Assembly (NCBI GenBank): GCA_977020255.1 | Contig: CDROCS010002866.1 | Location: 248,001-312,000 of the forward strand | Source of the DNA: Obrimoposthia wandeli | Lineage: Eukaryota | Direction: 5' to 3' | Length of the DNA: 64,000 bases | In this document: positions 55,703-58,898 of the stretch, in pieces | Position numbering within the stretch: position 1 is the stretch's first letter | How the letters are laid out: each line of letters starts with the position of its first letter | Program-made: the position numbers and the translations under genes | The notes under the pieces: generated by a model | The model's input: the letters and a program-made list of their open reading frames with translations, nothing else | What the model was told of the DNA's origin: nothing | Databases searched by the model: none

Positions 55703-57205
55703 ATGAAAAAATTACCGATTTCCAGCGATGCACAATGGACTTTTGCATTAATTGAACAATATGATTGCGAAATTGCACGCATTGCCGCCAGCTTTAAACT
55801 AGACACCTACCCTAATCAAATAGAAATTATAAACTCAGAACAAATGATGGATGCATACGCTTCTGTGGGTATGCCACTACATTACAACCATTGGTCATAT
55901 GGAAAACGTTTTTTAGATACTAGTCAGAACTATCAACAAGGAAAAATGGGCCTTGCTTATGAAATTGTGATTAATTCTGATCCATGCATCGCTTATTTAA
56001 TGGAAGAAAACAGCATGACGATGCAAGCTTTAGTGATTGCTCATGCTTGCTACGGTCATAACTCTTTTTTCAAAGGGAACTACCTCTTTCGCACTTGGAC
56101 TGACGCGTCATCTATTGTGGACTATTTAGTTTTTGCTAAAAACTATATCAGTAAATGTGAAGAACGCTACGGCATTGAAGCAGTAGAATTAATGCTAGAT
56201 TCTTGTCATAGTTTAATGAACCTTGGTGTTAACCGCTACATTCGCCCTCCTTCATTAACGCCTGAGCAAGAAAGCAAGAATATAGCTGAACGTGAGGAAT
56301 ATATTCAGCAGCATATTAATACATTATGGACTAGCATCCCGCACAAGGATGACCTACAAGCCTCTAAAGAAGAAGTTAACTTCCCTCAAGAGCCGGAGGA
56401 AAACTTACTCTATTTTATTGAAAAAAATGCGCCATTATTAAAACCATGGCAGCGAGAAATCATTCGAATTGTACGAAAAATGGCACAATATTATTACCCG
56501 CAAAAACAAACCCAAGTAATGAACGAAGGCTGGGCATGTTTCTGGCATTACAACATTCTAAATCAAATGCACGCTGAAGGCTTAGTCACTGATGGGTTTA
56601 TAATGGAGTTTCTTCAATCTCATACTAGCGTCATTTACCAACCCGCTTTTGATAGCCCTTATTATAATGGTATAAACCCTTATACATTAGGCTTTCACAT
56701 GATGATGGACATTCAACGAATTTGCCAAAAGCCCACGAATGAGGATAAAGAGTGGTTCCCAGAAATAGCAGGGACACCTTGGTTAGATGCAATCCACTAT
56801 GCAATGAAAAACTTTAAAGATGAAAGTTTTATTCAGCAGTACTTATCACCACATCTAATGCGTGAGTTAAAACTCTTTGCCATTTTAGATAACACCAGTA
56901 AACCCAGTTTAGTAGTATCCTCAATTCACGATGAGTCAGGCTACAAACAGCTGAGAGAAAACCTTGCAAACCAATATAATTTAGGTTTTTTAGAGCCTAA
57001 TATTCAAATTTATAACGTCGCCGTTCGAGGAGATAGGTCGTTAACACTTCGTCACTTTATTCATCAAGACAGGCCTCTAGCTGACTCAGTAACAGATGTT
57101 TTATCACACTTACACAAGCTTTGGGGTTTCAATATAAAACTAGAATCCATTAACGATGCAGGAGAAGTACTCAAAAAATACCATTTCCCACAGCACCAAA
57201 CTTAA
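55703..57205 (+). CDS. SpoVR family protein (YcgB)
   Basis: HWSYGK, GLAYEIVINSDPCIAYLME, HACYGHNSFF, MNEGWA; prkA-yeaH-spoVR operon. Confidence 0.95.
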   Translation: MKKLPISSDAQWTFALIEQYDCEIARIAASFKLDTYPNQIEIINSEQMMDAYASVGMPLHYNHWSYGKRFLDTSQNYQQGKMGLAYEIVINSDPCIAYLMEENSMTMQALVIAHACYGHNSFFKGNYLFRTWTDASSIVDYLVFAKNYISKCEERYGIEAVELMLDSCHSLMNLGVNRYIRPPSLTPEQESKNIAEREEYIQQHINTLWTSIPHKDDLQASKEEVNFPQEPEENLLYFIEKNAPLLKPWQREIIRIVRKMAQYYYPQKQTQVMNEGWACFWHYNILNQMHAEGLVTDGFIMEFLQSHTSVIYQPAFDSPYYNGINPYTLGFHMMMDIQRICQKPTNEDKEWFPEIAGTPWLDAIHYAMKNFKDESFIQQYLSPHLMRELKLFAILDNTSKPSLVVSSIHDESGYKQLRENLANQYNLGFLEPNIQIYNVAVRGDRSLTLRHFIHQDRPLADSVTDVLSHLHKLWGFNIKLESINDAGEVLKKYHFPQHQT

Positions 57206-57298
57206 ACTTTCTAATCATTCAAATTATGGTAAGCGATGTATGGACTCCACCACCTCACATACGTAGGCTGATGTGTACGTAAACAAAGGAGTTCATAC

Positions 57299-58333
57299 AT
57301 GAATAATTTTAATGTTAGAAGCCTAGATTTAGCAAAGAACGTGATTCAAGTTTGTAAGATAACGAAACATGGTGAGCTTATTTCAAATAAACCACTGACG
57401 CCTCAAAAGCTTAAAGAATTATTGGTCAATACCTCACCCTCTATTATCGCAATGGAAGGCTGTGGCAGCTGTCACTTCTGGGGCCGGTTAGCAAAATCAT
57501 ATGGTCATGAAGTTATAATTATTACTCCTAAAAGAGTTAAGGCATACCTGCAAGGGCAAAAAACGAATGCTAATGATGCTTTAGCCATCGCCGCGGCGGC
57601 AGCCCAAATTGGCGTACGTTTTTGCCCCATAAAAAATATTGAGCAGCAATCGTTACAAACACTGGAAACAAGCAGAGAGTTCTTAAGTCTAGACCAAACA
57701 GCTCTGAGTAACCATATTCGTGCGTACCTTTATGAGTATGGTATTACAATTAATAAAGGAAAAAAGAGCTTGAGAGAAGCGGTTATAACTATATTGGATG
57801 ATAACGATACACTGCTTCCTTCATCTTTGAAACACACATTACTGTTACTTTGGGAGCGTTATCAATTGACCGATGACCAACTAAATCAAATCAATAGAGA
57901 TAAAGCATCACTAGTGAAACAGATTGAACCTTGTAAAAGATTAATGGATTTAGAAGGGGTAGGTGAAGTATGTGCATCAATGCTTTATGCCAGTTTAGGT
58001 GATGGTAGAGAATTCAAAAATGGCCGACTGGCATCCGTTTACATTGGATTAACACCGAAGCAGCATAGCTCAGGAGGTAAAGTGTATATGATTGGCATTG
58101 ATAAAAAAGGGGAAAATAAAGATCTACGAGCCGCTTTGTATCAAGGTGCATTATCAGTGATCTCTCGATTACCCACAGAAGCTAAAACAATTAAACAATC
58201 TTGGTTGATAACACTTATTGAACGTGTTGGATTGAAGCGAGCCTGTATTGCTCTTGCAAATAAAACCGTTCGAACTGCCTGGGCTATATTAAATACAGGT
58301 AAGCCGTATCAACCTGTGCTAATAACTAGATGA
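57299..58333 (+). CDS. IS110 family DEDD recombinase/transposase
   Basis: LDLAKN, AMEGCG, KTNANDA, GVGEV, GLTPKQHSSGGK, IALANKTVR; third catalytic Asp appears as Asn (N90). Confidence 0.95.
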   Translation: MNNFNVRSLDLAKNVIQVCKITKHGELISNKPLTPQKLKELLVNTSPSIIAMEGCGSCHFWGRLAKSYGHEVIIITPKRVKAYLQGQKTNANDALAIAAAAAQIGVRFCPIKNIEQQSLQTLETSREFLSLDQTALSNHIRAYLYEYGITINKGKKSLREAVITILDDNDTLLPSSLKHTLLLLWERYQLTDDQLNQINRDKASLVKQIEPCKRLMDLEGVGEVCASMLYASLGDGREFKNGRLASVYIGLTPKQHSSGGKVYMIGIDKKGENKDLRAALYQGALSVISRLPTEAKTIKQSWLITLIERVGLKRACIALANKTVRTAWAILNTGKPYQPVLITR

Positions 58334-58394
58334 TTAATGTACTTTCAAATTTTCTTAATCTTAATAAAACAAATTCTACGACGATAACGTGACA

Positions 58395-58545
58395 TAAAAG
58401 GTAAGACCAACCTGCCAAAAACCTGTGTTGAGCGACAGCCAAATAAGGCTTTGTAAGCGAAAAGGATGGTAGGTGCGCAAACATCAAAGACTAGAGGGTC
58501 GCTCTCTCAATAAGAAGCCGTATATACGCAAGCAGTTTACATTTT
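58395..58545 (+). ncRNA. Putative bridge/seek RNA (boundaries approximate)
   Basis: Contains 7-nt matches to both target flanks (TTGAGCG 58428-34, GTAAGCG 58453-59) either side of a hairpin inside an ACCTGCC/GGTAGGT stem, then matches to the donor junction (ACATC 58481-85, ATATACG 58522-28). Confidence 0.7.
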
Positions 58546-58898
58546 CATGTTAAATTTAACGTTGTAAAATAGGTGGAGTCCATATACGCTCAATATACCC
58601 CATCTAATAATTTGCAGCTGTAAGCATTAGGCTAGTCCCAAATTCATCAATTTGGAGACAAACATATCTAAAGCTAAATACTGGCAGCAACGCATGGCCA
58701 AACACTAGATAAAAGAAAACCCTAAATCATTACTGAACTGAGGTTTCTCGTTTTTCCATGCAAACTCTTAAGGCAGAGTCCGAGGCTACTAACTCCGAGA
58801 ATTGTTCACCTTTATAATGCTTTAAATGCTTTAAATGCTTTTAGCTAATCATGATTTCATGACGCGTATGTTTGCTAATATCCTATATCTAAAAAATA

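What the first reader, a model, noticed from the sequence alone, without database searches (positions are those of the whole stretch)
58334..58588. Readable bridge/seek RNA: guide segments match this element's own target and donor junction
Removing the IS at the shared CG gives the target ...GGTAAG-CG-CTCAAT... The right non-coding end contains TTGAGCG (58428-34, reverse complement of CGCTCAA at 58587-93) and GTAAGCG (58453-59, identical to 57229-35). They flank an AGCC/GGCT hairpin inside an ACCTGCC/GGTAGGT stem. A second loop in the same order has ACATC (58481-85, reverse complement of GATGT at the left end) and ATATACG (58522-28, identical to the right end 58582-88) around an AGAG/CTCT hairpin. 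Known: IS110/IS1111 recombinases use such RNAs. This instance gives a candidate programmable recombinase with a CG core and a predicted target GTAAGCGCTCAA.
Basis: partly seen in the sequence, partly recalled or inferred. Interest (0 to 1): 0.85.

Follow-up and report, generated by a model that had tools for sequence, protein, structure and literature searches.

The report
IS1111 element with readable guide RNA

Summary

**What it is.** Window 57236-58588 is a 1353-bp IS1111-type insertion sequence. It has a 344-aa DEDD transposase, 13-bp subterminal inverted repeats, a short left end and a 255-nt right non-coding end.

**The RNA.** The right end encodes a two-lobed structured RNA. In 42 relatives, 97.8% of predicted pairs form, and 14 pairs show compensatory changes.

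**The guides.**
- Target lobe: GTTGAGCG (58427-34) is complementary to the right flank CGCTCAAT. GTAAGCG (58453-59) is identical to the left flank.
- Across 37 related insertions with 30 distinct guide pairs, the guides change together with the flanks. The footprint is 5 + CG + 6.
- Donor lobe: ACATC and ATATACG match the element's two ends. These guides covary with the ends in a distant clade.

The guide order (top-strand match first) and the downstream position are those published for IS1111 seekRNAs/bridge RNAs in 2024. This is a new member of a known kind, not a new mechanism. The same scan has noted others on other DNA of this assembly.

**Caveats.**
- The transposase has Asn at the third DEDD position, which is Asp in 120 of 120 homologues.
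- The donor lobe has one broken conserved pair.
- The only other copy is a 99-nt stump.
- RNA expression could not be tested.

The copy is probably inactive.

The parts
57229..57235 (+). Left half of the target (GTAAG) plus the shared CG core, directly left of the element
   Evidence: Read. It is identical to guide 2 at 58453-59. The truncated second copy in the assembly has the same 7 bases at its left junction.
57236..57298 (+). Left end of the IS (63 nt), with the left subterminal inverted repeat TATGGACTCCACC at 57239-51
   Evidence: The inverted repeat is 13 nt and 100% complementary to 58572-84. The left-end 16-mer, within 3 mismatches and mostly exact, is found in 61 related loci.
57299..58333 (+). 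Transposase gene, 344 aa, of the IS110/IS1111 DEDD type. The GLTPKQHSSG motif is present.
   Evidence: Pfam PF01548 and PF02371. NCBIfam NF033542, 251.5 bits against a cut-off of 140. Homologues reach up to 79% identity in the protein database and 90% in a metagenome contig.
57566..57568 (+). Codon AAT = Asn90 at the third DEDD position, which is Asp in all relatives
   Evidence: 120 of 120 homologues and all 6 genome relatives have Asp here. A profile alignment places it on the KTDAVDA motif of ISCro4, equivalent to IS621 D102. Mutating D102 abolishes IS621 recombination (PMC11208158). An independently assembled contig of run X1 shows the same letters.
58373..58383 (+). 5' strand of a long-range closing stem that encloses the whole RNA
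   Evidence: It pairs with 58560-70. In 33 relatives 93.6% of cells pair, against 32-57% when the partner is slid; 24 cells have changes on both sides, against 9.2 in shuffles.
58400..58408 (+). Small 5' hairpin GGUAAGACC
   Evidence: Nearly invariant in 42 relatives, so there is no covariation to test.
58410..58474 (+). Target-binding lobe. Outer stem 58410-17 with 58467-74; CCU 58422-24 with AGG 58463-65; hairpin AGCC 58437-40 with GGCU 58447-50. The guides lie in the internal loop between these stems.
   Evidence: 7 of the 8 outer-stem pairs and 2 of the 4 hairpin pairs show compensatory changes. Frequent G-U pairs fit the + strand as the RNA sense.
58427..58434 (+). Guide 1 (GUUGAGCG): pairs with the top strand of the core plus the right target half, CGCTCAAT (58587-94). 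The last pair is a G·T wobble.
   Evidence: Across 37 loci the 8 positions match the right flank in 89-100% of loci. The next two positions drop to 14% and 5%.
58453..58459 (+). Guide 2 (GUAAGCG): identical to the left target half plus core, so it pairs with the bottom strand
   Evidence: Across 37 loci 7 positions match the left flank in 78-100% of loci, then 43% and 8%.
58475..58533 (+). Donor-binding lobe. Base pairs GC 58475-76 with GC 58532-33; stem 58489-92 with 58516-19; hairpin GAGGG 58494-98 with CUCUC 58504-08.
   Evidence: Compensatory changes are seen in 5 pairs. A58490 opposite C58518 is the only break among 42 sequences of a G-C pair that the other 41 keep.
58481..58485 (+). Donor guide on the 5' side (ACAUC): complementary to GATGT, that is the core G plus the first four bases of the left end
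   Evidence: Read. Many relatives (17 of the 42 aligned) extend it to ACAUCG. In a distant clade this segment changes to (A/U)UYCCAUC while the left end changes to ATGGRAT.
58522..58528 (+). Donor guide on the 3' side (AUAUACG): identical to the last five bases of the right end plus the core
   Evidence: Read. Five variants (ATATACG, ATATATG, ATCTATG, ATGTATG, ACATAAG) each match their own right end 7 of 7 in distant relatives.
58560..58570 (+). 3' strand of the closing stem. It contains TTGTAA (58562-67), a possible -35 box.
   Evidence: Stem support is. The promoter reading is inference: TTGTAA, then 17 nt, then TACG plus AT would form only when the ends are joined in a circle. Such a junction promoter is reported for IS1111 elements (PMC11187229).
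58572..58588 (+). Right subterminal inverted repeat (58572-84), the terminal ATA, and the CG core (58587-88)
   Evidence: A contig of a relative in run X2 stops matching at 58587.
58589..58594 (+). Right half of the target (CTCAAT)
   Evidence: Complementary to guide 1.

Best explanation
Window 57236-58588 is an IS1111-type insertion sequence.

**The RNA.** Its 255-nt right end encodes a structured RNA of about 140-200 nt, a bridge RNA or 'long seekRNA', with two lobes.
- In the first lobe, an internal loop presents two guides. One pairs with the top strand of CG+CTCAA(T). The other pairs with the bottom strand of GTAAG+CG. Together they specify the 13-bp site GTAAG-CG-CTCAAT, which is where the element sits.
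- In the second lobe, two guides pair in the same way with the joined ends of the element (…CCATATA-CG-ATGTATGG…).

**How it would work.** By analogy with tested relatives, the transposase binds this RNA. The RNA brings the circular form of the element and the target together, and strands are exchanged at the CG. In tested relatives the RNA is transcribed with the transposase from a promoter that forms only when the ends are joined.

**What is shown and what is inferred.**
- Shown here: the anatomy, the conserved structure, and the co-variation of guides with flanks and with ends.
- Inferred from the family: that the molecule is an RNA, that the protein binds it, and that it drives recombination.

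**State of this copy.** It is most likely no longer able to move by itself. Its transposase has Asn in place of the invariant third catalytic Asp. It departs from six other near-invariant positions. Its donor lobe has one broken conserved pair.
For: **Family.**
- Pfam PF01548 and PF02371; NCBIfam NF033542.
- 13-bp subterminal repeats.
- A 63-nt left end against a 255-nt right end.
- The GL-P----SG motif.

**Structure.**
- 29 pairs form in 97.8% of cells, against 33-52% when the partners are slid.
- 14 pairs have compensatory changes, and 0 of 500 shuffles reach the observed values.
- A closing stem is supported separately.
- The covariance model finds this site at 147 bits and no other significant site (next best E 0.11) in the window.

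**Target guides.**
- 37 loci with 30 distinct guide pairs.
- Own-flank matches of 5.57 and 4.76 out of 6, against 2.79±0.21 and 2.68±0.20 when loci are permuted.
- Sharp edges at 6 and 5 bases beyond the core.
- The nearest relative (92% nt identity) keeps the left guide and left flank. It has TTAGGCG instead of TTGAGCG, and its right flank is CGCCTAA instead of CGCTCAA.
- The truncated second copy has GTAAGCG at its left junction.

**Donor guides.** Five right-end variants and several left-end variants are mirrored in the second lobe of distant relatives.

**Guide order and position.** They match the published IS1111 seekRNA: the top-strand match lies 5' of the bottom-strand match, and the non-coding region is downstream of tnp (PMC11187229).

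**Inactivity.**
- N90 against D in 120 of 120 homologues, and six other departures from columns at least 97% conserved.
- Alignment of N90 to the DEDD motif.
- D102 mutants of IS621 are dead.
- The A·C mismatch is unique among 42 sequences.
Against: - No RNA data exist for this sample, so expression and the RNA's ends are unknown.
- The fold of the single sequence is no more stable than shuffles.
- No Rfam family matches.
- No empty target site was found, so the pre-insertion sequence is inferred from the two junctions.
- The 5' donor guide is only 5 bases in this copy.
- Asp-to-Asn at this position has not been tested in any IS1111 enzyme; the published mutants are in IS621 and the substitution was not to Asn.
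- Most relatives are short metagenome contigs. Some are the same insertion seen twice; exact duplicates were removed only from the RNA alignment.
Confidence: 0.9

Rival explanations
1. The short matches are chance, or are leftovers of how the element ends were formed, and have no guiding role.
For: - The segments are only 5-8 bases long.
- The 5-mer ACATC is expected often by chance.
- The fold energy is unremarkable.
Against: - Both target 7-mers occur together in 0.025% of shuffles, and all three 7-mers in none of 20,000.
- In relatives the same loop positions change whenever the flanks change, with sharp footprint edges.
Confidence: 0.01
2. The guides act as DNA, not RNA. Single-stranded or hairpin DNA at the element's end would pair with the target, as in the IS200/IS605 family.
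For:
- Sequence co-variation alone cannot tell an RNA strand from a DNA strand of the same sense.
Against: - The protein is of the IS110/IS1111 family, not an HUH transposase.
- For four IS1111 members, RNA from this same region co-purifies with the enzyme and is required and reprogrammable (PMC11187229).
- The many G-U pairs in the stems fit an RNA of + sense.
Confidence: 0.03
3. The element is fully active. Asn90 is tolerated, and the single A·C mismatch is harmless.
For: - The reading frame is intact at full length and the guides match the site perfectly.
- In IS621 the third DEDD residue mainly hydrogen-bonds the serine loop rather than binding metal (PMC11208158), and Asn could keep a hydrogen bond.
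- The ends and repeats are intact.
Against: - Asp is invariant in 120 of 120 homologues.
- Mutation of the equivalent residue abolishes IS621 recombination.
- This copy departs from six more near-invariant positions.
- The assembly holds only this copy and a 99-nt stump.
Confidence: 0.25

Closest known systems
IS1111-family seekRNA elements ISEc11, ISPa11, ISKpn4 and ISPst6 (Siddiquee et al. 2024, PMC11187229)
   Same: - A transposase of about 340 aa with the DEDD and GL-P----SG motifs.
- Subterminal inverted repeats.
- A long non-coding region downstream of tnp.
- Two short target matches that overlap at the insertion point, with the top-strand match 5' of the bottom-strand match.
- Natural re-direction between close relatives by change of the guide bases.
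- The first lobe here (about 78 nt) is the size of their short seekRNA (70-100 nt).
   Different: - A different subgroup: the nearest database protein is 79% identical, and plasmid-borne relatives are below 60%.
- The target is a unique intergenic 13-mer, not an attC site, a REP or a transposon end.
- Nothing was tested at the bench.
- This copy carries Asn at a catalytic Asp.
IS621 bridge RNA of the IS110 group (Durrant et al. 2024, PMC11208160; Hiraizumi et al. 2024, PMC11208158)
   Same: - Two internal loops, one for the target and one for the donor.
- Each loop pairs with both DNA strands around a 2-base core.
- A composite DEDD plus serine active site.
   Different: - The RNA lies in the right end, not the left.
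- The order of the two guides is reversed.
- The core is CG, not CT.
- The subterminal repeats are long.
- Protein similarity is detectable only in the C-terminal domain and weakly in the RuvC domain.
Predicted bridge RNAs of IS1111 elements catalogued in ISfinder (Durrant et al. 2024, Fig. 6)
   Same: That study predicted a bridge RNA in the right end of 93% of IS1111 elements. This element fits that pattern.
   Different: I could not check whether this element or its subgroup is in ISfinder. Rfam 15 gave no match.

Membership tests
IS1111 group of the IS110 family | Transposase with the RuvC-like DEDD domain (PF01548) and the Tnp domain (PF02371) | tested here: met
   Both domains score above the gathering cut-off. 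NCBIfam NF033542 scores 251.5 bits against a cut-off of 140.
IS1111 group of the IS110 family | All four DEDD residues present | tested here: not met
   D10, E53 and D93 are present. Position 90 is Asn, where 120 of 120 homologues have Asp. This argues against activity of this copy, not against its descent from the family.
IS1111 group of the IS110 family | GL-P----S(T)G motif in the C-terminal domain | tested here: met
   GLTPKQHSSG at residues 250-259. G250, P253, S258 and G259 are invariant in 120 homologues. The motif is as defined in PMC11187229.
IS1111 group of the IS110 family | Subterminal inverted repeats of 7-17 bp, set in a few bases from the ends | tested here: met
   A perfect 13-bp repeat, 3 bases from the left end and 2 bases plus the core from the right end.
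IS1111 group of the IS110 family | The longer non-coding region lies downstream of tnp | tested here: met
   63 nt upstream and 255 nt downstream.
IS1111 group of the IS110 family | Insertion at one specific sequence, in one orientation | tested here: inconclusive
   There are only two copies. Both have GTAAGCG at the left junction, but the second copy lacks its right end. Relatives with the same guides sit at the same flank words.
seekRNA / bridge RNA | [quoted passage not shown] | tested here: met
   58427-34 and 58453-59. They are in the IS1111 order.
seekRNA / bridge RNA | Guides change together with the target among relatives | tested here: met
   Permutation test on 37 loci. The nearest relative differs in one guide and in the matching flank.
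seekRNA / bridge RNA | Conserved secondary structure supported by compensatory changes | tested here: met
seekRNA / bridge RNA | A second loop that pairs with the joined ends of the element (the donor) | tested here: met
   The 3' side matches 7 of 7. The 5' side matches 5 bases and misses the core C in this copy. Co-variation with the ends is seen in distant relatives.
seekRNA / bridge RNA | The RNA is made and is bound by the transposase | not testable with these tools
   No RNA run holds the stretch.
seekRNA / bridge RNA | Changing the guides changes the site used | not testable with these tools
   This needs a bench assay. Only natural variation was examined.

The most novel reading that the evidence does not exclude
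The copy is not a decaying fossil but a retained, catalytically silent RNA-guided DNA-binding module. An intact full-length protein with Asn at the catalytic Asp, plus a guide RNA still matched to its own site, might for example hold or mark the site, or act only with an active partner elsewhere.

A second, smaller novelty would be that in this subgroup the second core base can differ between the two junctions and is read separately by the two guides, as seen in several relatives.
Probability: 0.05. Interest if true: 0.6.

Novelty: new member of a known kind. Interest (0 to 1): 0.3.

Why it matters
As biology it is routine. It adds one more IS1111 element whose guide RNA can be read from sequence, in line with the two 2024 reports.

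Its practical value lies in the subgroup rather than in this copy. About 40 relatives share the same ends and the same RNA scaffold but carry some 30 different guide pairs, with a clean 5 + CG + 6 footprint. That is a natural reprogramming series, and it could guide the choice of an intact relative for recombinase engineering.

It also shows that a reader can decode such elements from raw sequence. The enzyme's catalytic residues must still be checked before a copy is called a candidate tool.

Tried and rejected
- **Rfam 15.** A scan of 57100-58800 at E up to 1 gave only a chance hit to the MS2 operator.
- **Single-sequence folding.** It gave no signal (z = -0.06). It pairs the two guides with each other through the palindromic GCGC, and I do not take that as real.
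- **Promoter and terminator scan.** It gave chance-level hits and no terminator. I propose no promoter inside the integrated element.
- **RNA runs.** The search found none. Laying contigs of four DNA runs confirmed the letters but showed no empty site. The one joint (57356 to 57557) has a 29-letter side in a mixed sample, and I disregard it.
- **Unoccupied targets.** There is no exact copy in the window, and four matches with up to 2 mismatches against 6.5 expected. The assembly has 21 exact 13-mers against 17 for the reversed control. The target is therefore not a repeated element.
- **Minus-strand ORF.** I considered that the 53-aa ORF at 58326-58487 might explain the conservation. I rejected this because the variation is compensatory in stems and tracks the flanks.
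- **Not run.** I did not fold the protein or run a complex prediction; neither would change the verdict.

Full report
**1. What is in the sequence**

The stretch 57236-58588 is a compact mobile element. It begins ATGTATGGACTCCACC and ends GGTGGAGTCCATATACG. A perfect 13-bp inverted repeat, TATGGACTCCACC, lies at 57239-51 and 58572-84, set in a few bases from each end. A CG stands on both junctions, at 57234-35 and 58587-88.

Between the ends lies one gene, 57299-58333, for a 344-aa protein. The protein carries both domains of the IS110 family, PF01548 and PF02371. It passes NCBI's model NF033542, 'IS110 family RNA-guided transposase'.

The left non-coding end is 63 nt and the right one is 255 nt. 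The element sits between convergent genes: 30 bases after the stop codon of a SpoVR-like gene, and upstream of the end of an RTX-repeat gene on the other strand.

**2. Family features**

The features that set IS1111 elements apart from the rest of the IS110 family are all present, as listed by Siddiquee et al. (PMC11187229) and Durrant et al. (PMC11208160):
- subterminal repeats of 7-17 bp;
- the long non-coding region downstream of the gene;
- a 330-350 aa transposase;
- a GL-P----S(T)G motif, here GLTPKQHSSG.

**3. The RNA structure**

Relatives came from two searches:
- A genome-collection search gave six full-length relatives at 61-73% protein identity. They come from marine gammaproteobacteria, several of them Colwellia.
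- A metagenome scan gave 80 more loci.

An alignment of 42 distinct right ends folds into a consensus with two lobes. Each lobe is a stem, an internal loop and a capping hairpin.

Counted on that alignment:
- 97.8% of pair cells are standard pairs, against 33-52% when the 3' partners are slid by one to three columns.
- 14 of 29 pairs show changes on both sides.
- None of 500 shuffles reaches the observed values.

Frequent G-U pairs fit an RNA of the + sense.

A longer alignment adds a closing stem, 58373-83 with 58560-70. It pairs in 93.6% of cells against 32-57% when slid. The structured RNA may therefore span about 198 nt.

A covariance model built from the alignment finds the window's site at 147 bits. 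The next-best sites there score E 0.11 and 0.52, so nothing else is significant.

**4. The target guides**

In the first lobe, the 5' side of the internal loop reads GTTGAGCG (58427-34). The 3' side reads TTGTAAGCG (58451-59).
- The first is complementary to the right junction CGCTCAAT. The outermost pair is a G·T wobble.
- The last seven bases of the second equal the left junction GTAAGCG.

In shuffles of the non-coding end, the two 7-mers occur together 0.025% of the time.

The stronger test is comparison with relatives. In 37 related insertions with both flanks readable, there are 23 different first guides, 26 different second guides and 30 different pairs.

| | Own-flank matches (of 6 variable positions) | After permuting loci |
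|---|---|---|
| Guide 1 | 5.57 | 2.79 ± 0.21 |
| Guide 2 | 4.76 | 2.68 ± 0.20 |

- Matching holds at 89-100% for eight positions of guide 1, then falls to 14% and 5%.
- Matching holds at 78-100% for seven positions of guide 2, then falls to 43% and 8%.
- The family footprint is therefore 5 bases, a 2-base core and 6 bases.

The nearest relative is 92% identical over the whole element and 90% in protein. It keeps the left guide and sits after …CGTAAGCG. Its right guide is TTAGGCG, and its right flank is CGCCTAA. This is natural reprogramming of one arm.

The assembly's only other copy is a 99-nt left-end stump that abuts an Rhs-repeat gene fragment. It also follows GTAAGCG, in an otherwise unrelated flank.

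The order of the guides, top-strand match first, is the one reported for IS1111 seekRNAs and is the reverse of the IS110 type.

**5. The donor guides**

In the second lobe, ACATC (58481-85) is complementary to the core G plus ATGT of the left end. ATATACG (58522-28) equals the last five bases of the right end plus the core.

Within the close subgroup the ends never vary, so there is nothing to test there. In relatives at 36-40% protein identity, which the covariance model still recognises at 49-75 bits, the ends do differ and the loop follows:
- Right ends ATATACG, ATATATG, ATCTATG, ATGTATG and ACATAAG each recur 7 of 7 in their own second lobe.
- The 5' side changes from ACATC to UYCCAUC where the left end changes from ATGT… to ATGGRAT.

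In this copy the 5' donor guide stops one base short of the core: ACATCA, where many relatives have ACATCG.

**6. How it most likely works**

By analogy with ISEc11, ISPa11 and ISKpn4, the transposase binds the RNA. For those elements, RNAs of about 80 and about 150 nt from this region co-purify with the enzyme, are required, and can be reprogrammed.

The RNA would pair with both strands of the target and of the joined ends, and strands would be exchanged at the CG.

[quoted passage not shown] Here a conserved TTGTAA at 58562-67 lies 17 nt before TACG. Joined to the AT of the left end, that would give a -10-like TACGAT. This is inference only, and the same bases also form the closing stem.

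Nothing about expression could be tested, because no RNA run holds the stretch.

**7. The state of this copy**

Residue 90 is Asn (codon AAT, 57566-68). The evidence that this matters:
- All six genome relatives, the 90% relative and 120 of 120 database homologues have Asp.
- A profile alignment puts this residue on the KTDAVDA motif of the solved ISCro4 and IS621 enzymes. That makes it the third DEDD residue, D102 of IS621.
- D102 stabilises the catalytic serine loop, and its mutation abolishes recombination (PMC11208158).

The copy also shows other signs of decay:
- It departs from six other columns that are at least 97% conserved.
- In the RNA, A58490 breaks a G-C pair kept in the other 41 sequences.

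An independently assembled contig of a public run shows the same letters across 57279-58863, so this is not a slip of the assembly. That run may, however, be the source sample.

The target 13-mer is not repeated in the window or beyond chance in the assembly, and there is no second full copy.

I read the element as a stranded, probably inactive copy, with about 0.7 confidence. Its guide RNA gene is still almost intact.

**8. Comparison with what is known, and novelty**

The mechanism, the position of the RNA and the order of the guides were published in 2024, and NCBI's annotation model already names the protein as RNA-guided. The element is a new member of a known kind.
- Its nearest database protein is 79% identical.
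- Plasmid-borne relatives are below 60% identical.
- Rfam has no family for it.

Other notes of this scan describe further IS1111 and IS110 guide RNAs on other pieces of the same assembly. The covariance model finds five more distant members there. The assembly is 1.35 Gb in 6912 contigs and evidently holds many organisms.

What may be useful is the subgroup: identical ends, one scaffold and about 30 natural guide pairs.

**9. Verdict**

| | Verdict |
|---|---|
| Observation | Confirmed |
| Novelty | New member of a known kind |
| Interest | 0.3 |

Noticed in passing
L048, L071, L075 (left junction CG, right junction CC); L030, L065 (right CA); L006 (right TG); L035: In several relatives the two junction dinucleotides differ. 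Guide 1 follows the right junction (for example CCGGAATC) and guide 2 follows the left (…GAGCG). The second core base therefore seems to be read separately by the two guides, or the crossover lies between the two core bases.
   Followed up: partly
L006, L007, L008, L043 (Colwellia and relatives); L035: These relatives sit inside short palindromes, for example ATTCCCGA…TCGGGAAT and ATCTTCGA…TCGAAGAT. In L035 the 14 bases either side of the element are perfect reverse complements of each other. Their targets look like REP-type hairpins, unlike the window's unique site.
   Followed up: no
L051 against L007; L005, L023, L024: These are damaged relatives. L051 is the L007 insertion with an internal deletion that removes the 5' half of the target lobe. 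L005, L023 and L024 are one insertion whose right end is replaced after the donor lobe.
   Followed up: no
L002 1501-1599 (G000 contig C3817:62530-62628): A 99-nt stump of the same IS, 94% identical, ends abruptly against the end of an Rhs-repeat ORF on the other strand. The same junction is present in contigs of run X1.
   Followed up: partly
G000 contigs C122:763579-763712, C253:2286508-2286644 and 4484271-4484404, C985:2693-2828, C5358:9903-10053: There are five further matches to the covariance model, at 49-64 bits, on other contigs of the assembly. For three of them (on C122, C985 and one on C253), guide 1 and the 3' donor guide match their own right flank and right end.
   Followed up: partly
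window 58800-58830: The 9-base unit AATGCTTTA is repeated in tandem here. A contig of run X1 carries one more unit than the window.
   Followed up: no
window 56900-57230: Run X1 holds contigs 86-97% identical to the end of the SpoVR-like gene that then diverge at 57184 or 57228. Related strains or species are therefore present in the same sample, and none showed the empty target site.
   Followed up: no
L076-L090 (distant clade, 36-40% protein identity): In this clade all four guides specify a TG core and the right junction reads TG. The left junction reads TA before a conserved ATGG. This is another case of junction dinucleotides that differ.
   Followed up: partly
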